A stretch of 64,000 nt of DNA. It comes from Ophelia neglecta (Eukaryota). Positions 1 through 44,052 of the stretch are shown in pieces. The notes under the pieces were generated by a model. The model made no database searches and was not told the DNA's origin. It worked only from the letters and a program-made list of their open reading frames with translations. The DNA is taken from positions 4,898,001 to 4,962,000 of the forward strand of contig OZ260666.1 of NCBI GenBank assembly GCA_965285935.1. The letters are read 5' to 3'. The first letter of the stretch is position 1. Each line of letters starts with the position of its first letter. The translations under genes and the position numbers were made by a program.

Positions 1-1580
1 CGTAGGATAATCTGGTCTTCTTCTTTCTCATGTAGCAGTTGATTTTTCAACAAAATTTTAAAGCACTGAGCAAAATACATACTGGGAGAACATTGTACAC
101 CATGCTGTTCTTTCCTAGGAATGGAAACACAAAATCGCTTTGGATATTGTAGGTTTTCTAAAGGCGATAAGTCCCATTTCACGAAATATTGTAATTCGTC
201 AAAAGTTCCAACTTGATTGTTCATGTAGAAGCTTCCAGTGCCTTCCAAGACATCACTAGGTCTAAACATTTCAGTTGACGTATGGGGAGCTTCATTGTGA
301 CCCTTCCCACTTTTCTGGACGACTCTATTATCCTCTTGGCAAATAGCAATGCAGCAATTGTGAAGCAGGTTTTCCACTTGTGTATGAATAGCGTGTACGT
401 CTGAGTTAAAACAGCCCGTGTATTCTCCGTCCAGACGCTCGGTACATTTTTTTATATGCGTTGCCTGTTCTATTGCCTTCATCCGAACAATGTACTGTTT
501 GTCTTTTGATTCGACGATTTTGGTCATTACATTCGCCACACGGTCAGGACAACATGTTGCTAAGCTCGCTAGCATTGTATCCTGTGGTCTATTGGCATTT
601 AACTTTCCCGACAATGCTTTTTCGAAGGTTGTTAGTTCATGATTGTCAACAACGTCCAACCTGTTGGATGACAAAGCTTTTTCTCTTTCAGGTCCCAAAA
701 AATGGACTTTAGGGCCCTTCTCAGCTAGAAAGTCTAAAATGTCAGTGTGTCTGTTCTCACATGCTATGTCCAAAGCAATTTGTCCGGTCTGGCATGGTTG
801 ATTTATATCGGATCCAAAATCGTACAAGACGCGTACAATATCTAAATGACCTGCTCCAGAAGCGAGATGTAAAGGGGTGAAACCATTCACCCCAGCAAGA
901 TTTACTTTAGCGCCTCTCTTGACAAGGAGTTCAACCACGTCTAAATGGCCCTTGGCGGAGGCTGCACAAAGAGGGCTGTTTCCACAGCTCAACGTGTTAA
1001 CCTTTGCTCTATGCTTACACAGATAATCTACGATTTTTGTGTAACCTTCCCTAGACGCCAATTGAATTGGGGTTAATCCTTCAGACCAAGCGAAATTCAC
1101 TTTTGCTCCTATTTTGACCAGATATTCTACAATATCCTTTTTTCCGTAGACAGCGGCGATCCCGAGAGGTGTGTACCCAAGCTCCTCTATTAGGTTTAAG
1201 TCAGTTTCTCTGTTCGATGCAATTTGTCTGACTTCATTGAAATTTCCGTTCAGAACAGCCTCGTGTATAGGACGGTTGCCTGATGTTTTCAATAATTTAA
1301 GATCATTTTCGCCTAGATCTATTGGAAGGCTCCCCTCTGCGCGTCCGTAAGTGACGTGTTTATTTTTAATGCTGTCTATACCTCCCTTACTACCTAATAA
1401 CGGGTCTGGTAGCTTGGTGGCGTCTTGATGTGGAACAAGAGACTGCGTTGGACAATTTGTATCTGTATCTTCTTGGTCGCCATTGTGTAGGGCCTCGCTC
1501 TCGATGTCAAGTAGTGGCCGACCCTCTTCTGATTTGCGGAAATTAGGTTGGTCTAATTCGTCATGCGCGATACCCTCCTC
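1..1580 (-). CDS. Gene A last exon: 6 ankyrin repeats fused in frame to a Mab-21/cGLR domain
   Basis: Hand translation is open from the acceptor at 1581-1582 to base 1: EEGIAHDELD...RPIHEAVLNG...TPLGIAAVYG...TPLHLASGAG...ALDIACENRH...VENLLHNCCIAICQED...VLEGTGSFYMNNQVGTFDELQYFVKW...EDQIILR. Not in the ORF track because no stop is reached. Confidence 0.9.
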
Positions 1581-4500
1581 CTAAGGAAATAGAAGTTTTG
1601 AGGTAAATATATCGTTTATGCTGTGTTTAAACAAAGTGTCAATAGAATGTAAATAATGGGCTTGCCCTTGATGTATATTGGAATTATTCTTAAACAAATA
1701 GGTAATTGTTCAACATATATTGTTTGTTGGGACTCTAACAACAAGAAACTGAACCTATATTTTAGAAATATTATACCTGAGAGACCGAAACATTCCAATT
1801 ATCTGTCTAATACTACTTGAAACTGTCTGCATTCACTCCCGGTATTCTCTACTTGTTAATAGAATGCAAAACATGGACTTACATCTGATTGAAAGGAACC
1901 AATACATAACTTATGTCAAGATAAGAAATGAATTACCTGGTCTGGCTTTATTCCTATTTCATTTCTTTGCATTTTAACGTAGCTGTAGACTACCACAGGT
2001 ACAATGGTATATCTAGAAACAGCAAAAGCGGCGGCGAGGAGGCAAAGCAACACGATTGCTGCGACGGCGATACCGACGATGGCTGTAGACGATCTGTTCT
2101 GGATTGCAACCTGGCCAGCTGCATGCAAAGGTTGTGTTGATTCTTCGGTAAACGGTTCCTTACCAGCGATCTGGGATATCGCTGTCGATAAGGCATCGAT
2201 ATTGGAAGTACTAAATGTGTTTGTGTAAGTGGTTTCTGTTGGAAGGATCCTGGTTGACATTTCATTCGGCACAGAACCTACTAAAATAGCTATATTAAAA
2301 CACACAATGCTAGAACAGCGATTATTTAATATATTAATATTCATTTTGACAAGACTATCATAATGGACATAAAAATAAACGGTTAATATCTTTGCCAGAA
2401 CAAGCATAGATTACAATGAATTGTAGGCATCTTTTTATCATCATGTTCATGTTATATGTGTAAATATCTTTGGAATAGTTCCGACGATGTTGTCCTAAAA
2501 ATAGACGACAACGCCTACTCAGGTTCATAGAATACACAATATACAAGAGCCAGCTTGTCAATAGCGTTAAATATGAATTCTAATTTCCGTAAGTCTACTA
2601 GTGGGCAAATATATAACTAGTGAACATTTATTGATTTTGAAGTTCGCGGCCACCCTTTGTTTGCGCGGCAGGGTAGTGTGGTCTGAAGTAATTGGTCGAT
2701 GGGAGCTTGCAAAATATTCAACGCTTATAGCAGCAAATTTCATTTCATCAATACATTGTTCTACCAATTTTGACATTGAAGTGTATTTATGATAAAGGTC
2801 ATTTTATAGTAGATTGAATAGATTCAGATTTCATTCATGACAAACAGGCTCTCTTTAACTAAATATTGTTATTTTAGGAGAAGTGTATTCGTATGTCTTT
2901 TGCACGATTTATTGTTTCATAATATGGCGGCTACATTATTACATAGATAAATGCATCATGAACCACAACAACAAGCTGTTTATAAATTGATAAAAAGCAA
3001 TGCATATGCATGCCTCGATTTCAATGTGATTTCTTTTATTTAGTTGGGCCTATTATGTTAGTCATAACATGAAACATCTCATCCTAACTGAAAACAAGTG
3101 CTGTCAATTATAATTCAGCAGCACAAACTGTATCTGAGTAAATCAAGTAAGCTGGTTTAAGATTAATTCAATAAGTATTGGCTTGTATTATGTCAATCAG
3201 CGTCATCAAATCTAATTCTAGAACTTGATGCTCAGTGCCACAGTGTGATTTGTGATCACCTTTTATCGAGCGAGACCACTGGTTGCATGGGGTTTAGCAA
3301 CTCATTGCCCCTGGAATCTTTTTGACACATTAAGCAAGGACGTGGCTCACTTTAGTGGAAAGCGTTTGTGTAATAATTTCCATGCGGTTAATCAGCTGTC
3401 CGGTTGTTTGATTTAGCTCGAAATGACAGTTGTAATTATGCCAGTAATATAAACAATTGATGGACATTTGAGTCAGAAAGAGTTTCGCAATCAAACTATT
3501 GTCCTATTATCAAAAGTTAAATATTTATTAACCCTACGATACCATTATTCAGATGTCATAAGAAGCATTCATGAAACGACAGTATAATTCAACAAGAATG
3601 AAAAGGTAACTGTCAACCAGTATACAAACCGCTGTAGTAAACTTGTAATGTGGTTGAGCTGGGCTCTAAAGCTATGAACGTTAGAGTTACTTCAACCTCT
3701 TGCTGTAGCACGTTACCAAAATGAAATTCTCCATCACACTCGTAATCGTGGTCTGAATGTCCAGTACAGGAATGCTGCTTCTCGCCTGTTGATAAAGTAC
3801 AATATACCGGAGGTTCGGCGGCAGGGATGGCTACAATCAATCGTAACATTCCTGGTTTTTTTAGCTCCAGCGTTTTGTTCCTTATAACAAATTTACGACT
3901 TGACTCGCCATACATCTGACTGTAGGAGATGGCTGGCTGCAGATATTTCTCCCGATCTGGGCACGCTGATAAAAAAAATCTGATCAACATTAATATTAAG
4001 TAAGAAATAACGTTTGCTTATAATACTTCTTGGAGGAATATAATCACTTTTTTTGCATTTTAATGATTTATAAATCTCTGAAAAAGCACATTGATCTATA
4101 TTATTCCTCGCTTAATACACGGCAGTCTAAGGTGCTCGTATACCGCGATACAAGGCATCAGATAATGCTCATTACATAAAATAATATAAAGGATTCAGGC
4201 TCTCCTGTTTGTTACTAATTAACATAGGTAAGTAATAGTATTAAATGAACACTAAGCACTAAAATGTGTATTAAACTTATACCATGCAGTTAAAATTGCA
4301 TTCATTTATAGCCATCTCGGTGAGTGAAACAAACAAACTTTAGCCATGTGTATATTGCGGCGTCGTTATATTTTGTTTTGCCTAAGTACATTTGCAGTAC
4401 TATGTTCAGGCGTTAAGCTATGACATACACAAGTATTAAGTCGACGAAATCACATTAAAACTCGATAAAATGCCAAAACCAAACCTATATTCACCTGAGG

Positions 4501-5362
4501 ATGTTAACACGCGTAATTCGGCAGAGTCGTGGATAAGTGTGACCAGTCCTTTAAGATAAACCTGTAATTCATAGGTACCACCGTCTGATGAAGATGCACT
4601 GTCTAATTTGATTCCGTAGGTACTGTTCTCAATCAGGTGGACGTTGTCAGTGCGTATTAGAGGCACTTTTTGTTTATCAATGCCAATAAGTAACTTCAAA
4701 TCTGGTTTAATCTTGTAAAAGTATACATAATCAACCTGATCCGGGTCGCCCTTGTAGCTCCAGAGCAGTCGGGCGGTGTCTCCTTCGCAGACGTGTACAG
4801 TTCCCGGACCCAGGAGCCATCCTGTAACAATATAAAGATAATTTGCGAGATTCGAACAAATTATGCGCTACTCCAACCCCGAACATCATGAATGCTTTGT
4901 AGTGCCGACCTTGATGTTACCTATTACAAATATTTTGCATGACATTCATTGAACCNNNNNNNNNNNNNNNNNNNNNNNNNNNNNNNNNNNNNNNNNNNNN
5001 NNNNNNNNNNNNNNNNNNNNNNNNNNNNNNNNNNNNNNNNNNNNNNNNNNNNNNNNNNNNNNNNNNNNNNNNNNNNNNNNNNNNNNNNNNNNNNNNNNNN
5101 NNNNNNNNNNNNNNNNNNNNNNNNNNNNNNNNNNNNNNNNNNNNNNNNNNNNNNNNNNNNNACGAAATTATTGCAGGGTGTTATGCTGAAGGTTTAATTC
5201 ATGATTTTAGTGCTTTAAGTGAGAGTAAATGTCGAAATGAAAAAGGAACCCAGCAAATTGTAACTTACCATCCTCTGTGTTACAGACTCCAGCATACTGT
5301 AAAAATAATACAGTGAGCAATACGATTTTGAAAAACAGCATCCCACTAGAATCACAGATCAT
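1..5362 (-). CDS. Gene A: type I membrane receptor, SP-IgV-like-beta domain-stalk-TM-6x ankyrin-Mab-21/cGAS-like domain (3' end beyond window)
   Basis: Exons 5362-5269 (MICDSSGMLFFKIVLLTVLFLQYAGVCNTED, signal peptide), 4821-4495 (Ig), 3965-3630, 2277-1937 (stalk+TM), 1580-<1. All GT-AG, phases 1,1,1,0; exons 1-4 are the same lengths as in gene B (94/327/336/341 nt). About 890 codons without a stop in the window. Confidence 0.88.
1937..2277 (-). CDS. Gene A exon 4, Ser/Thr-rich stalk and transmembrane helix
   Basis: AIVGIAVAAIVLLCLLAAAFAV hydrophobic stretch; acceptor TTTTAGTAG, donor CAG/GTAATT. Confidence 0.85.
4495..4821 (-). CDS. Gene A exon 2, V-like Ig domain without canonical disulfide
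   Basis: GDTARLLWSY...YGIKLDSASSSDGGTYELQV: DxGxY tyrosine corner present; phase-1 junctions. Confidence 0.85.
4956..5161. other. Assembly gap in gene A intron 1
   Basis: Run of N. Confidence 0.99.
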
Positions 5363-39600: not shown

Positions 39601-42600
39601 CACGAATATTGTTTCTATTTAACTGGTCAGTAACTTGTCTAAAGTGCAATAAATAGTCCAAGTCGTTCTGCTCAGTCGGGACATTACCCTTCCACATGCG
39701 AGTTGCGTAGTAAACGCCCTGACTGATAACATTCACTAAACCACTAGTCGTCAAATCACATCACAAGACAGTAGGACCATATGACAAATAAGATTTGATG
39801 ACGCTGATTGACATAATACAAGTCAAGACTTATTGAATTTATCTTAAACCAACTTCCATGATTTACTAAGATACAGCTAAATTGTGCTGCTGAATTAAAA
39901 ATTGACAGCACTTGTTTTCAGTTAGGATGAGCTGTTTCATGTTATGACTAACATAATAGGCCCAACTAAATAATAGAAATCACCTTGAAATCGAGGCATG
40001 CACATGCATTGCTTTTTATCAATTTATAAACTGCTTATTGGTGTATTTCATGATGCATTTATCTATGTAAAAATATAGCCGCCACATTATGCAGCAATAA
40101 ATCGTGCAAATGACATACGACTAGACTTCTCCTAAAATGACAATATTTAGTAAAAGATAGCCTGTTTGTCATCAATGAAATCTGAATCTCTTCAATCTAC
40201 TATAAAATTACTTTTATTATAAATACTCTTCAATGTAAAAATTGGTAAGAGAACAATGAATTGATGAAATGAAATGTGCTGCTGTGTTTAATATTTTGCA
40301 AGCTCCCATCGGCCAATTACTTCAGACCACACTACCTGCCGCGCAAACAAAGGGTGGCCGCGAACTTCAAAATCAAAGTTATAAATGTTCACTAGTTATA
40401 TATATTAGCCCACTAGTGGCTCACGGCAATAGGGAGAGGGATATTCTCGCAACTACTAACGTTTCGGAATTAAACTGGCTAGATGATTAGAATTCATATT
40501 AACGTTATTGACAACCTGGCTCTTGTGTATTGCGTCTTGTATGAACCTGTGTAGGCGATGTCGTCTATTTTTTAGGACATCATCGTCGGACCCTTTTCCA
40601 AAGATATTTACACCTATAAAAGGAACATCATGATAAAAAGATTCCTACAATTAATTGTAATATATGCGTGTTTTGTAAAAATAATTACCCGTTTATTTTT
40701 ATATCCATTTTAATCGTCTTGTCAAAATGAATATTTATATATTAAATGGTCGCTGTTCTAGCATTATGTGTTTTAATATAGCTATTTTGATAGGTTTTGT
40801 GCCGAATGAAATGTCAACCAAGATACTTCCAACGGAAAACAAAGTCAAAAACACATTTAGTACTTCCAAGATCGATGCTAAATCGACAGCGATAACCCAG
40901 ATAGCGGGTAAAGAACTGTTTACCGAAGGATCAACACAACATTTGCATGCGGCTGGTCAGGTTGCAATCCAGAACAGATCATCTACAGCCATAGTCGGTA
41001 TCGCCGTCACGGCAATCGTGTTGCTTTGTCTCCTCGCCATCGCTTTTGCTGTTTACAGATATACAATTGTACCTGTGGTAGTCTACAGCTACGTTAAAAC
41101 GCAAAGAAATGGACTAGGAATAAAGCCAGATCAGGTAATTCATTTCTTATGTTGACAAACGTTATGTATTGGTTACTTTAAATCAAGTGTAAGTAAATTG
41201 TCAGCATTCCATTGACAAGAGAATATCGGGAGTGAATGCAGACAGTTTTAAGTAGTATTTGACAGATCCTTGGAATGTTTCGGTCTCTCAGGTATTTTAT
41301 TTCAAAAGGATAGGTTCAGTTTCTTGCTGTTAGCGTCCCAACAGAACATAAAAACAAAATCATGTGTAAGTTAAATTTACGCGGCGCCAATCAATAGATA
41401 TTTAACAATTGCCTATTTGTTTAAGAATAATTCCAATATACATCAAGTGCAAGCCCATTACTTACATTCTATTGACACTTTGTTGAAACAATATATTTAC
41501 CTTTAAAACTTCATTTTCCTTAGGAAGTGGGTATCCCGCTTGATGTATTAGACCAACCTACTCTCCGCAAATCAGAAGACGGCCCAACACAGTCTCTTGC
41601 TCCACATCAAGACGCCACCCAGCTACCAGACCCGTTACTAGGTAGTAGGGGAGGTATAGACAGCATTCAAAATGAACACGTCAGTTACGGATGCGCAGAG
41701 GGGAGCCTACCAATAGACCTAGGCGAAAAGAATGTTGAAATATTGCAAATATCAGGAAAACGTCCTATACACGAGGCTGTTCTGAACGGAAATTTGAATG
41801 AAGTCAGACACATTGTATCGAACAAAGAAATTGACTTAAACCAACCAGAGGAGCTTGGGTACACACCTCTCGGGATCGCCGCTGTCCACGGACGAAAGGA
41901 TATTGTAGAATATCTGGTCAAAGTTGGAGCAAAAGTGAATTACGCTTGGTCTGAAGGATTAACCCCAATACAATTGGCGTCCAGGGCAGGTTACACAAAA
42001 GTCGTAGCTCATCTTTGTAAACACGGAGCAAATGTTAACAAGTTGAGCTGTGGGAACAGCCCTCTTTGTGCAGCCTCCTCCAAGGGCCATTTAGACGTGG
42101 TTGAACTCCTTGTCAAGAAAGGCGCTAAAGTAAATCTTGCTGGAGTGAATGGTTTCACCCCTTTACATCTCGCTACTGGAGCAGGTCATTTAGATGTTGC
42201 ACGCGTCTTGTGCAATTTTGGAGCAGATATAAATCAACCATGCCAAACCGGACAAACTGCTTTGGACATAGCATGTGAGAACAGACACACTGACATTTTA
42301 GACTTTCTAGCTGAGAAGGGCCCTAAATCCATTTTAGGTCTGCAAGAGAAAAACATTGTCATCTAACAGGTTGGACGATGTTGAAAATCATGAAGCACCA
42401 ACAACCTTCAAAAAAGCATTGATGGGAAAGTTAAATGCCAATACACCCCAGGATACCATGCTAGCGAGCTTAACAACTTGTTGTCCTGACCGCGAGTCGA
42501 ATGTAAAATTCAAAACAATCAAAATCGATTAATTAAAAGACAAACAGTACGTAGTTACCATGAAGGCATTAGAACAGGCAACGCATATAAAAGCATGTAC

Positions 42601-43030
42601 TGACCGTCTGGACGATGAAGGCACGGGTTGTTTTAACTCAGACGTACACGCTTTTCATACACAAGTTGAAAAGCTGCTCCACAATTGCTGCATTGCAATT
42701 TGCCAAGATGTTAATAGAGTCGTCCAGAAAGGTGGGAAACGAGACAATGAAGCTGCCCCTGCTTCAGCTGAAGCGTTTAGACGTGGCGATATCTTGGAGA
42801 GCACTGGACGCTTCTACATGAACAATAAAGTTGGAACGTTTGACGAATTACAATATTTCGTGAAATGGGAGTTATCTTCTTCGGAAAACCAACAATATCC
42901 ATAGCCAATTTGTGTTTCCATACCTAGGATAAAACAACATGGTCTACAATGTTCTCCAAGTATGTATCTTTGAAACTTTGTTGAAAAATCAACTGCTGCA
43001 TGAAAAAAAAAGACCAAATTATGCTACGAT
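33700..43030. repeat. Right arm of inverted segmental duplication (left arm ~1-9900)
   Basis: Reverse-complement matches: 9260-9900 vs 33700-34440; 7570-8248 vs 34442-35050; 2300-3220 vs 39790-40790; all A/B exons; base 1 aligns to ~43029. Confidence 0.9.
37607..42366 (+). CDS. Gene B: paralog of gene A, open as SP-Ig-beta domain-stalk-TM-6x ankyrin (646 aa), truncated before the Mab-21 domain
   Basis: Exons 37607-37700, 38540-38866, 39074-39409, 40794-41134, 41524-42366 (TAA). Same junctions as gene A; a frameshift at ~42328-42355 relative to A leads to the stop. Confidence 0.8.
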
Positions 43031-44052
43031 GTGATCCAAATACACAAGGCCCGGGATTATGTGTGGGACTCTCATGGGTCTGTCCCTCAGAGCATACACA
43101 TGACCTCCGACTTAGTATAACACCCGTCGTTGTGTGGAAAGACAAACTGATGTCTGAAGTATGTCAAATTCCCGATGCCATGAAAAAGGCCCCATTTGAG
43201 TCCATTATGGATGACTTTATCAAAATGCGAGTTGTATTAATACCAGACCCCAATATTGATATAACTGTCGAAGAAGAATACATCACCTCGTCCTGGAAAG
43301 TGTCATTTGATGACACAGAACGTCTAATATTTAGATGCTTAGACGATATTTCATCAAATATCAGGACATGTTTCCACCTTCTGCAATTGCTCAACAACTT
43401 TCTACCCACGAGAATAACTCGTTCTGAAGAGCATGACGTTTGGAAATGCCACCCGGTGATATCGTCCTACGTGCTGTACAATACACTGCTTCAGGTGTGG
43501 ATTAAACATCCAACCAAGGCTGAATGGGATGACCATAATTTTCCCGACCGACTGGTCAGTTGCCTTGATTCTCTCAGCAAATTTACCTATCAAGACTTTC
43601 TCTCGGAGAAGACAGAGCCGTCTATACAGATTTCCCACCTCAACCATATACAACAGCAAACTCTAAACGGCATACTTGGCTCTGACCTGAAGGAGATCCT
43701 CAACATACTGCACCAAAAGGGAACGCGTATGACGAGAAAGGACTCCATCACCCAGACGCTTGGCAAAACAAACAAAGCCATACAAAGACGTTCTTTAGGA
43801 AGGGCATCAGTATACGCCAAATATGACGTCATCTGTGTGCTTAGCTTGAATGCAGCAGACGGTGTGCATTACACCGTGCATTCTGGCTGGAAGGAAGTAT
43901 ATGCATCTGGGCATCTTAAGAAGAAAACCTATGTAGGAATTACAGATGGCTCTTATTGCTACAGGATTCCTGCACCAAACGTCTCTTGTAGAAAGTTTCA
44001 CCTGTATGAAAATATGTATGATTTCATTTTGAAAAAGTTTGAAACAAGTTAA
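42328..44052 (+). pseudogene. Disrupted Mab-21/cGAS-like region of gene B
   Basis: Versus gene A: frameshift ~42328-42355, TAA 42530-42532 (GAA in A), TAG 42902-42904 (AAG in A), 11-nt deletion ~42966, A-run indel ~43003-43011. Mab-21 motifs are clear: TGRFYMNNKVGTFDELQYF, GPGLCV, LRLSITPVV, WKVSFDDTERLIF, RTCFHLLQLL, ISSYVLYNTLL, HPTKAEWDDHNFPDRLVSCLDSL. Confidence 0.8.

What the first reader, a model, noticed from the sequence alone, without database searches (positions are those of the whole stretch)
183..239. The Mab-21 domain looks like a pseudo-enzyme (E-L-Q instead of E-h-D)
Seen: the NTase signature reads GS-x11-E-L-Q in intact gene A, and the Q is shared by gene B (42851-42853), so it predates B's decay. 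In B the expected third acid (hDhhP) reads LSITP, and two usually conserved lysines read LLQ and SYVLY. Established: cGAS needs the E/D/D triad (human E225, D227, D319); MAB21L1 and MiD49/51 are Mab-21-fold proteins with altered triads that bind nucleotides or act as scaffolds. Inference: the domain may be a nucleotide or cyclic-dinucleotide sensor, scaffold or decoy rather than a synthase.
Basis: partly seen in the sequence, partly recalled or inferred. Interest (0 to 1): 0.75.

Follow-up and report, generated by a model that had tools for sequence, protein, structure and literature searches.

The report
Catalytically dead cGAS-like domain, still conserved
The tail of this invertebrate receptor-like gene carries a genuine cGAS/Mab-21-type domain that has lost two of its three catalytic acids yet is still conserved, so it probably works as a non-enzymatic module, as some known relatives do.

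Summary
On the minus strand, window 239..183 reads T-G-S-x11-E-L-Q-Y-F. Gene B has the same Q at 42851-42853. The third acid position reads L-S-I-T-P in B (S at 43114-43116) and also in gene A, just outside the window.

The domain is a real cGAS/Mab-21 fold. The AlphaFold model has pTM 0.84. VIA-align gives Z 17.8 to coral Sp-cGLR1, 17.3 to MAB21L1, 17.2 to mouse cGAS and 15.0 to MiD49. A profile of the family aligns gene A's E-L-Q and L-S-I to E-F-D and V-D-I of a true cGAS orthologue.

In the same genome, 35 of 69 paralog loci keep GS/E-h-D/h-D-h. These include giant intronless ankyrin proteins. All 21 loci of gene A's tandem cluster lack the second and/or third acid wherever the position could be read. 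Another 13 loci are degenerate in other ways. Of 50 public relatives with both motifs readable, 48 keep all three acids.

Other nucleotide-contact positions are also lost, but 40 of 56 family-conserved columns are kept. dN/dS is 0.22-0.46. I read it as a dead but maintained NTase-fold module, most likely an adaptor or scaffold.

Dead Mab-21 proteins are already known, so this is a new variant of a known kind. I found no expression data.

The parts
1..1580 (-). Gene A, last exon. It is an 867-aa open frame that runs on for about 1,020 nt beyond the window's first base, to a TAA stop at G000:C9:4896977-4896979. It encodes a linker, ankyrin repeats and the cGAS/Mab-21-like domain.
   Evidence: Translation; sequence; open frame of 867 aa without stops.
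681..1253 (-). Ankyrin repeats of gene A (about residues 110-300 of the 867-aa frame).
   Evidence: Pfam: Ank_2 E 8e-36, Ank E 1.3e-33.
1..500 (-). N-terminal part of the cGAS/Mab-21-like domain (residues 361-527). The rest of the domain (to residue 866) lies outside the window.
   Evidence: AlphaFold model; Foldseek; VIA-align; paralog alignment.
183..239 (-). The finding itself: T-G-S-x11-E-L-Q-Y-F. The GS loop lies at 231-236, the first acid E462 at 195-197, and Q464 in place of the second acid at 189-191. Q456, in place of the family's invariant loop Lys, lies at 213-215.
   Evidence: column homology; loop Lys.
42530..44052 (+). Gene B, the Mab-21-like region. It is a broken copy: it lies in at least two reading frames with in-frame stops.
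   Evidence: 4940542-4940976:+ has 1 TGA and 1 TAG; L013 pieces in frames +0 and +1.
42803..42859 (+). Gene B's copy of the motif: T-G-R-x11-E-L-Q-Y-F. GS has become GR at 42806-42811 and the Q codon is at 42851-42853.
   Evidence: L013 reads 'STGR ELQY'.
43102..43125 (+). Gene B's third-acid strand, D-L-R-L-S-I-T-P. The S codon at 43114-43116 stands where active relatives have Asp.
   Evidence: L013 reads 'RLSITP'.
1916..2407 (-). Context: an open frame upstream of gene A's last exon with a Ser/Thr-rich stretch and a hydrophobic segment that could span a membrane (IVGIAVAAIVLLCLLAAAFAV). No transcript shows that it is spliced to the last exon.
   Evidence: No Pfam hit. A sister locus, L047, has a comparable hydrophobic open frame upstream.
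3613..3990 (-). Context: a candidate ectodomain exon of gene A. It belongs to a family with at least 151 matches in this genome, and copies lie 3-16 kb upstream on the same strand of 14 of the 21 cluster loci.
   Evidence: No Pfam hit.

Best explanation
Gene A's C-terminal domain is a true cGAS/Mab-21-fold (cGLR-like) domain. It descends from ankyrin-cGLR genes whose active sites look competent.

An ancestor of the whole tandem cluster on contig C9 (4.41-5.0 Mb) lost the metal-binding triad. Gene A reads E462/Q464/S556 where active relatives read E/D/D. Gene A has also lost the invariant loop Lys (Q456). Within its young subclade it has lost a helix Lys (Q646) and a phosphate-contact Ser (F673). 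It therefore almost certainly cannot make a nucleotide second messenger.

The fold itself is kept under purifying selection. Most probably it serves as a non-catalytic protein-interaction or assembly module next to the ankyrin repeats. If the upstream ectodomain and hydrophobic exons belong to the gene, it would sit on the cytoplasmic tail of a membrane protein.

Shown here: the fold, the homology of the catalytic columns, the loss of the acids, and the sequence constraint. Inferred: that the domain is inactive, that it acts as an adaptor, and that it is membrane-tethered.
For: Fold. The AlphaFold model built on 28 paralogs has pLDDT 80.3 and pTM 0.84. Foldseek ranks cGAS chains first, E 1.1e-10, TM 0.60-0.67 normalised to the target. 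VIA-align against 48,161 chains gives Sp-cGLR1 Z 17.8, CdnB 17.8, Cv-cGLR1 17.5, MAB21L1 17.3, mouse cGAS 17.2 and MiD49 15.0. ESM Atlas neighbours are molluscan Mab-21 clusters, score 0.96.

Column homology. The family profile hits Sp-cGLR1 at E 5.5e-5 with GS..ELD on GS..EFD. It aligns gene A's TGS/ELQ/LSI to TGS/EFD/VDI of P0078. P0078 is a cGAS orthologue aligned to solved cGAS at E 1e-88. P0078 also passes Pfam Mab-21 (PF03281) at E 2.9e-32.

The loss is derived.
- In the same genome, 35 of 69 loci keep all three acids.
- All 21 cluster loci read E-L-Q/K/R and/or L-S/I/V-I wherever the position could be read.
- Of 50 public relatives with both motifs readable, 48 keep all three acids.
- The tree needs only 2 changes of state, one of them below gene A's clade plus L046 and L047.

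Constraint after the loss.
- dN/dS over the domain is 0.23-0.44 for the deeper cluster pairs and 0.22-0.46.
- 40 of 56 columns that are at least 90% conserved in intact paralogs are kept in the cluster. 10 are lost and 6 are partly lost.
- The lost or partly lost set includes D464, D556, loop K456, K646 and S673. The same positions are also changed in the second dead lineage.

Precedents. MAB21L1 keeps 2 of 3 triad residues and shows no activity (passages). Shrimp Mab21 proteins lack NTase residues and bind IKK-epsilon (passages).
Against: - No transcript or protein evidence. No RNA run holds the gene, and the three runs laid are fragmented DNA-like contigs of one sample.
- Ten of the 21 cluster loci were left out of the intact-member alignment; most show stops, split frames or partial coverage.
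- The youngest pairs show dN/dS near 1: L015-L016 at 1.08, and L006-L008 NTase core at 1.21. The family is in birth-and-death turnover and constraint is weaker than in intact paralogs (0.11-0.21 at deep dS).
- dN/dS is a pairwise Nei-Gojobori estimate and dS is saturated in the deepest pairs.
- I had no coordinates of the model. Residue equivalence rests on sequence-profile alignments and on secondary-structure position, not on a superposition.
- Pfam's NTase model does not hit gene A.
- GS and the first Glu are invariant in the 11 intact cluster members. This could mean that some phosphate or metal binding persists.
Confidence: 0.6

Rival explanations
1. The domain is a non-catalytic ligand sensor. 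It no longer synthesises anything but still binds a nucleotide, a cyclic dinucleotide made by active paralogs, or nucleic acid, and passes this on through the ankyrin repeats. This would resemble MiD51 with ADP, MAB21L1 with CTP, or the inactive OAS domains that bind dsRNA.
For: GS and E462 are invariant in all 11 intact cluster members. MAB21L1 binds CTP and ATP at sub-micromolar affinity at a site outside the active site (passages). The same genome holds 35 loci with intact triads that could supply a ligand. The platform side of the fold was not examined.
Against: The donor-pocket contacts are eroding, not conserved. The loop Lys is lost in 10 of the 11 intact cluster members (L022 keeps it). 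The helix Lys and the Ser are further lost in gene A's own subclade. The sister branches L046 and L047 have also lost the first Glu. No binding data exist.
Confidence: 0.2
2. The domain is a decaying relic. The ectodomain and ankyrin part may matter while the Mab-21 part is dispensable, or the whole cluster may be drifting towards pseudogenes.
For: Ten of the 21 cluster loci were left out of the intact-member alignment, most with stops, split frames or partial coverage. Gene B's lesions sit in the Mab-21 region. dN/dS is near 1 in the youngest pairs. No expression evidence exists.
Against: At least 8 cluster members keep open frames of 810-867 aa. dN/dS is 0.22-0.46 across pairs with dS of 0.3-1.9. 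40 of 56 family-conserved columns, including buried Cys, His and Trp, are retained. In most deeper pairs the helix bundle and the C-terminal extension have the lowest dN/dS of the exon (0.14-0.34 and 0.17-0.43).
Confidence: 0.15
3. The domain is still an enzyme. It would use a non-canonical arrangement, for example E462 with neighbouring D461 or D552, or a one-metal mechanism.
For: D461 precedes E462. D552 lies on the same face of the strand as S556, at i-4. The authors of the MAB21L1 structure did not rule out residual activity with a Gln at the third position (passages).
Against: Two of three acids are gone, not one. D552 is also conserved in paralogs that keep the catalytic Asp, so it is not a compensating change. 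The residue before the first acid varies (D or N) among them. The replaced positions vary freely within the cluster (Q/K/R and S/I/V), as expected for released sites. Other NTP contacts are lost too.
Confidence: 0.05

Closest known systems
Animal cGAS-like receptors (cGLRs), e.g. Sp-cGLR1 (PDB 8gjy) and Cv-cGLR1 (PDB 8gjw); Li et al. 2023, PMC9980059
   Same: Same fold (Z 17.8 and 17.5). Sp-cGLR1 is the best sequence-profile match in the PDB (E 5.5e-5). Both show a lineage-specific radiation in an invertebrate genome. Ankyrin fusions of cGLRs are mentioned in that paper (passages).
   Different: Gene A fails the active-site motif that defines the curated cGLR set: E-L-Q and L-S-I instead of [DE]h[DE] and h[DE]h. 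That survey kept only proteins with complete sites. Gene A also appears attached to ectodomain and hydrophobic exons. The paper's Tables S1 and S2, which list cGLRs and their fusions, could not be opened.
MAB21L1/MAB21L2 (PDB 5eog; PMC4897736)
   Same: A Mab-21 fold with an incomplete triad and no detected NTase activity (Z 17.3, passages).
   Different: MAB21L1 keeps two acids (E73, E75) and has Gln at the third position. Gene A keeps one acid and has Gln at the second and Ser at the third. MAB21L1 is a small, single-domain developmental protein conserved across animals. Gene A belongs to a young tandem family with ankyrin repeats.
MiD49/MiD51 (PDB 4woy, 4oaf)
   Same: Membrane-anchored proteins with a dead NTase fold that act as adaptors. 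MiD49 scores Z 15.0. MiD51 is matched through P0078.
   Different: The MiD proteins sit in the mitochondrial outer membrane and recruit Drp1. MiD51 binds ADP; I saw this only as a reference title, and the rest is recalled. They have no ankyrin repeats or ectodomain. Gene A's membrane anchoring is inferred only.
Shrimp LvMab21-1/-2/-3 (PMC12928593)
   Same: Invertebrate Mab21 proteins that lack essential NTase residues and signal by protein-protein contact with IKK-epsilon (passages).
   Different: They are soluble proteins in a crustacean and are not a tandem family. No sequence comparison with them was made here.
Inactive domains of OAS2/OAS3 (recalled; OAS2 PDB 9h1z scores Z 11.8)
   Same: Catalytically dead copies of an NTase fold kept beside or near active ones.
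   Different: They occur in the same polypeptide as an active domain. Their dsRNA-binding role is recalled, not checked here.

Membership tests
cGLR as curated by Li et al. 2023 (PMC9980059) | Active-site motif h[QT]GS X8-20 [DE]h[DE]h X50-90 h[DE]h. | tested here: not met
   Gene A reads GTGS, x11, ELQY, x89, LSI. 35 of 69 paralog loci do meet it.
cGLR as curated by Li et al. 2023 (PMC9980059) | Homology across both the NTase core and the C-terminal helix bundle. | tested here: met
   Structural matches span model residues 2-499. The profile hit to a cGAS orthologue covers profile positions 36-341. There is a weak Mab-21_C hit on the helix bundle.
cGLR as curated by Li et al. 2023 (PMC9980059) | Predicted structural homology to known cGLR or CD-NTase enzymes. 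| tested here: met
   Foldseek E 1.1e-10 to cGAS. VIA-align Z 17.8 to Sp-cGLR1 and to CdnB.
cGLR as curated by Li et al. 2023 (PMC9980059) | Ligand-activated synthesis of a nucleotide second messenger. | not testable with these tools
   This needs biochemistry. The sequence argues against it.
Pfam Mab-21 (PF03281 NTase domain plus PF20266 Mab-21_C) | Score at or above the gathering cut-off (24.1 bits for each model). | tested here: not met
   For gene A, PF03281 gives no hit and PF20266 scores 20.7 bits. Of 8 paralogs scanned, 3 pass PF20266 and none pass PF03281. More distant relatives found with the family profile do pass PF03281: P0078 112.8 bits, P0093 45.9, P0067 32.1, P0097 30.6.
Mab-21-fold pseudo-enzymes (MAB21L1/2, MiD49/51, shrimp Mab21) | cGAS-type NTase fold with an incomplete catalytic triad. 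| tested here: met
   Fold. One of three acids is present, at columns shown to be homologous.
Mab-21-fold pseudo-enzymes (MAB21L1/2, MiD49/51, shrimp Mab21) | The fold is maintained by selection despite the loss of catalysis. | tested here: met
   dN/dS is 0.22-0.46. 40 of 56 conserved columns are retained. This is a pairwise method, so support is moderate.
Mab-21-fold pseudo-enzymes (MAB21L1/2, MiD49/51, shrimp Mab21) | A demonstrated non-catalytic partner or ligand (Drp1/ADP, CTP, IKK-epsilon). | not testable with these tools
   No interaction data are available.
MiD-like membrane-tethered adaptor | A transmembrane anchor in the same polypeptide. | tested here: inconclusive
   A hydrophobic open frame lies at window 1916-2407 and an ectodomain exon at 3613-3990, both upstream on the same strand. 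The sister locus L047 has the same layout. No transcript joins them.

The most novel reading that the evidence does not exclude
Loss of catalysis may have gone together with a change of job. A cytosolic ankyrin-cGLR enzyme would have been captured, by exon shuffling, as the cytoplasmic signalling module of a large, fast-evolving family of single-pass surface receptors with an Ig-like ectodomain. The dead cGLR fold would then act as the assembly platform of a new class of molluscan surface immune receptor, filling the role that TIR or death domains fill elsewhere. It might also dock onto the active ankyrin-cGLR giants.

Support so far. A same-strand ectodomain exon lies within 20 kb upstream of 21 of 34 dead-site loci and of 0 of 35 intact-site loci. 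The sister branch L047 also has ectodomain and hydrophobic open frames 2.7 kb upstream. However, the tree shows only about two independent losses, and I could not examine the second dead lineage.
Probability: 0.25. Interest if true: 0.8.

Novelty: new variant of a known kind. Interest (0 to 1): 0.5.

Why it matters
Surveys of cGAS-like receptors have kept only proteins with complete active sites, so the dead members of the large invertebrate radiations are uncharted.

This genome holds active-looking and dead copies of one cGLR-like family side by side. There appear to be two separate losses of the catalytic and NTP-binding residues, and the fold is conserved after each. That makes it a natural system for asking what a cGLR fold does when it no longer makes a messenger.

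If the link to the ectodomain and hydrophobic exons is real, a cGLR-derived module would be placed on a surface receptor. My three literature searches found no paper describing this.

By itself, a pseudo-enzyme in the Mab-21 family is not surprising. MAB21L1/2, MiD49/51 and the shrimp Mab21 proteins are precedents.

Tried and rejected
- A single-sequence search of gene A's domain against PDB sequences found nothing at E up to 10.
- The word-indexed search of 5.8 billion proteins found nothing at E up to 0.001 for lengths of 473-1505 aa. That tool's length window and word filter limit what this blank means.
- A sub-profile of the NTase core alone (A2, 21 sequences) gave no cGLR or cGAS match in the PDB. 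Its only hits were chance-level: alpha-xylosidase at E 0.26 and CD320. I therefore could not align the third acid directly to a solved chain. I reached it in two steps through P0078.
- The profile alignment of the 'HLLQ' helix to P0078 is out of register. Its match to Sp-cGLR1 is below significance (domain 2). The equivalence of K646 to cGAS's helix Lys is therefore only tentative.
- Expression. No RNA run holds the exon. The three runs laid are short contigs from one sample with no joints. They only show that the DNA, including the Q codon region, is present in those reads.
- Rescue of the active site by nearby acids (D461, D552) was considered and rejected. D552 is also conserved in intact paralogs, and the residue before the first acid varies among them.
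- Pfam finds no family for the ectodomain or hydrophobic open frames. I did not test whether the ectodomain is Ig-like.
- Supplementary tables of PMC9980059 were closed. They may list members or fusions of this family.
Full report
THE OBSERVATION

Window 239..183 on the minus strand translates to T-G-S-F-Y-M-N-N-Q-V-G-T-F-D-E-L-Q-Y-F. I number residues on the 867-aa open frame of gene A's last exon, which occupies window 1580..1 and runs on beyond the window. On that numbering:

- G449-S450 lie at window 236-231.
- E462 lies at 197-195.
- Q464 lies at 191-189.

Gene B carries the same E-L-Q on the + strand, with the Q codon at 42851-42853. Its GS has become GR.

The window is G000:C9:4898001-4962000. 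I therefore read gene A beyond the window. The exon stays open to a TAA stop about 1,020 nt further on. The strand that should carry the third acid reads H-D-L-R-L-S-I-T-P (S556). Gene B reads the same, with the S codon at 43114-43116.

Spacing is GS, 11 residues, ELQY, 89 residues, LSI. This fits the published cGLR motif h[QT]GS X8-20 [DE]h[DE]h X50-90 h[DE]h in everything except two of the three acids. The motif wording is from passages of PMC9980059.

IS IT A MAB-21/cGAS DOMAIN?

Pfam alone does not say so.

- Gene A's exon gives strong ankyrin hits. It gives only a sub-threshold Mab-21_C hit (PF20266, 20.7 bits against a cut-off of 24.1) and no PF03281 hit.
- Single-sequence searches of PDB sequences and of the 5.8-billion-protein set were blank.

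The case rests on four other lines of evidence.

1. Paralogs. The genome holds at least 87 matches to the domain. I aligned 28 of them (A1).
2. Fold. AlphaFold on that alignment gave pLDDT 80.3 and pTM 0.84.
   - Foldseek puts cGAS chains first (E 1.1e-10, TM 0.60-0.67 normalised to the target).
   - VIA-align against 48,161 chains gives Sp-cGLR1 Z 17.8, CdnB 17.8, Cv-cGLR1 17.5, MAB21L1 17.3, mouse cGAS 17.2, MB21D2 15.7, Tc-cGLR 15.4 and MiD49 15.0. These rows are effectively tied, so the fold is clear but the nearest subfamily is not.
3. Sequence profile.
   - Profile A1 hits Sp-cGLR1 in the PDB at E 5.5e-5.
   - It finds 110 representatives at E up to 0.001 among 1.84 billion proteins.
   - Of the ten whose clusters I looked up, one is named, from Mytilus californianus; the rest come from unnamed contigs.
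   - Of ten representatives scanned with Pfam, four pass PF03281: P0078, P0093, P0097 and P0067.
4. ESM Atlas. The nearest clusters are molluscan Mab-21 clusters, score 0.96.

ARE E-L-Q AND L-S-I THE CATALYTIC COLUMNS?

Yes, as far as alignments can show.

- The profile aligns gene A's LEGTGSFYMNNQVGTFDELQYFV to P0078's QQNTGSYYEFVKISEANEFDFML, and HDLRLSITPVI to KDIEVDIVPGL.
- P0078 is a cGAS orthologue. It aligns to mouse cGAS structures at E about 1e-88, with NTGS...NEFD and SVDI in the same register.
- The direct profile match to Sp-cGLR1 also puts the family's GS..E-L-D on GS..E-F-D.
- In the model, GS follows strand 90-93, E-L-Q lies on strand 107-113 and S556 lies on strand 195-212. This is the expected layout of an NTase core.

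I had no coordinates of the model, so no atomic superposition was made.

THE LOSS IS DERIVED, AND ITS EXTENT

I read the three positions in 69 distinct loci of this genome (L006-L075; L035 duplicates L026).

- 35 loci keep GS / E-h-D / h-D-h.
- All 21 loci of the tandem cluster at C9 4.41-5.0 Mb read E-L-Q, E-L-K or E-L-R at the second motif and/or L-S-I, L-I-I or L-V-I at the third, wherever the position could be read. This cluster includes gene A and gene B.
- 13 further loci are degenerate in six other patterns.

Among the 110 public representatives:

- 70 of 71 with the second motif readable have acid-x-acid.
- 66 of 69 have an acid at the third position.
- 48 of 50 with both motifs readable have all three acids.

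A maximum-likelihood tree of 58 own-genome domains plus 10 public ones (quick search, SH-aLRT support) gave these results:

- Gene A's clade has support 100.
- It is nested with two other dead loci, L046 and L047 (support 93).
- Only 2 changes of state are needed between 'all three acids' and 'not'.
- The second change lies at the base of an 11-member clade on C9 10.8-13.3 Mb.
- Long branches make some deep joins unsure.

WHAT ELSE CHANGED, AND WHAT DID NOT

I took the 56 alignment columns that are at least 90% conserved among the intact-triad paralogs and asked what the 11 intact cluster members have there.

- 40 columns are retained, 10 are lost and 6 are partly lost.
- The lost or partly lost set includes the two acids and the invariant Lys of the GS loop. 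That Lys (N-N-K, aligned to the H-V-K Lys of cGAS) is Gln in 10 of the 11 members; L022 keeps it.
- The set also includes a helix Lys (H-L-L-K). It is Gln only in gene A, L007 and L008 among the 11; gene B also reads LLQ.
- It also includes the second Ser of I-S-S-Y. This is Phe in gene A and L007, and it aligns to the F-S-S-Y / F-C-S-Y motif of cGAS.
- The second dead lineage has changed the same positions independently, in different ways.
- Retained are the GS, the first Glu, and buried Cys, His, Trp, Arg, Asp, Tyr and Pro positions across both lobes.
- The Tyr in 'S-Y-V-L-Y', where cGAS has Lys, occurs in every family member, active-looking ones included. It is not part of the decay.

SELECTION

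All figures are pairwise Nei-Gojobori dN/dS.

- Within the cluster, dN/dS over the Mab-21 region is 0.23-0.44 for the deeper pairs.
- Over the full domain it is 0.22-0.46 for cluster pairs with dS of 0.31-1.90.
- Intact-triad paralogs give 0.11-0.21 at deep dS and 0.41-0.44 at shallow dS.
- The youngest cluster pairs are near neutrality. L015-L016 gives 1.08. L006-L008 gives 1.21 in the NTase core, though this rests on very few substitutions.

The fold is therefore constrained, somewhat less than in the active-looking paralogs, in a family with rapid turnover. Ten of the 21 cluster loci were left out of the intact-member alignment; most show stops, split frames or partial coverage.

CONTEXT

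- Giant ankyrin proteins. One intact-triad paralog that I examined sits in a giant intronless open frame made almost entirely of ankyrin repeats. It is a 3,983-aa frame at C9:1.80 Mb, with 1,202 aa of ankyrin repeats before the domain and 2,316 aa after it. Other intact-triad paralogs lie in open frames of 1,146-5,333 aa, which I did not scan.
- Public relatives P0001, P0003 and P0006 are also ankyrin plus cGLR-like.
- Gene A's short ankyrin-plus-dead-domain exon lies downstream of a hydrophobic open frame (window 1916-2407) and a candidate ectodomain exon (3613-3990).
- That ectodomain exon has at least 151 matches in the genome (150 of 319 candidates scored).
- A same-strand copy lies within 20 kb upstream of 14 of 21 cluster loci and 7 of 13 other dead loci. 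None lies within 20 kb upstream of the 35 intact loci (my tally).
- The sister locus L047 shows ectodomain and hydrophobic open frames 2.7 kb upstream.
- Tandem duplicates share ancestry, so this amounts to about two independent events, not 21.
- No transcript links the exons.

MECHANISM

- Shown: the fold, the identity of the columns, the loss of two metal ligands and of other NTP contacts, and continued constraint on the rest.
- From established knowledge of the cGAS/CD-NTase two-metal mechanism: a site with one carboxylate out of three should not catalyse nucleotidyl transfer.
- Inferred: the domain persists as a non-catalytic module. I favour an adaptor or assembly role, by analogy with MiD49/51 and with shrimp Mab21 proteins that bind IKK-epsilon (passages).
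- I rank ligand sensing through the old donor pocket second, because that pocket keeps eroding in gene A's own subclade.
- MAB21L1 binds CTP at a platform-side pocket, not at the active site (passages). This keeps a sensor role through another surface open.

NOVELTY AND VERDICT

- Dead Mab-21-fold proteins are known in vertebrates and crustaceans. The cGLR survey set proteins without complete sites aside.
- Three full-text searches found no paper on dead cGLR-like domains in mollusc-type radiations or on a membrane-tethered cGLR-derived module. Supplementary tables were closed.
- I rate this a new variant of a known kind, with interest 0.5.
- The same first-stage scan also noted the receptor architecture and paralog B on this window. 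I used those notes only as leads.

Noticed in passing
G000:C9:1803392 to about 1815340 (+); loci L077:6393-9998, L029, L078:1-6948: A giant intronless open frame of 3,983 aa. It has 1,202 aa of ankyrin repeats, a cGLR-like domain with an intact GS/E-L-D/V-D-L site, then 2,316 aa holding about 59 ankyrin repeats. Other intact-triad paralogs lie in open frames of 1,146-5,333 aa on C1, C2, C9 and C12.
   Followed up: partly
G000:C9:10.8-13.3 Mb (L042, L044, L062-L070): A second, independent dead-site lineage of 11 loci in the tree (support 96). Its patterns are K-L-K/E-V-Y, R-M-V/V-I-E, K-V-N/E-V-S and E-I-V/I-I-S. The loci lie in open frames of 1,616-3,316 aa. dN/dS is 0.25-0.63. Same-strand ectodomain-exon copies lie 10-16 kb upstream of six of them. 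Gene structure was not examined.
   Followed up: partly
Gene A residues C390, C545, H549 and H551 (867-aa frame). C390 lies at window 413-411; the others lie outside the window.: A Cys and a C-x3-H-x-H cluster just before the third-acid strand are invariant or nearly so in active-looking and dead paralogs alike. This may be a structural metal site. It is not the cGAS zinc thumb position.
   Followed up: no
Window 3613-3990 (-) and at least 150 other places, mostly on C9 3.0-6.0 Mb and 10-19 Mb: The candidate ectodomain exon belongs to a very large family (at least 151 matches; 150 of 319 candidates scored). Many copies on C9 3.0-4.3 Mb have no Mab-21 exon nearby. Pfam gives no family for it.
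   Followed up: partly
Gene A residues 785-866, outside the window; model residues 430-512: A C-terminal extension of about 85 aa after the helix bundle, with strands and a final helix. It is conserved across the whole family (D834, Y838 and P841 nearly invariant). It has among the lowest dN/dS of the exon in most deeper pairs (0.17-0.43).
   Followed up: no
P0037 (public relative, 1,438 aa): A cGLR-like domain with an intact site is followed by a C-terminal OTU-like cysteine protease domain (PF02338, E 6.5e-7).
   Followed up: no
Window about 4950-5170: A run of N (assembly gap or masked) lies between gene A's upstream exons.
   Followed up: no
L079:2393-3078 (-), which is G000:C9:12091292-12091977: Upstream of the dead-site locus L047 lie an ectodomain-exon homologue and an open frame with a hydrophobic segment followed by a basic stop-transfer-like run. 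This is the same layout as upstream of gene A.
   Followed up: partly
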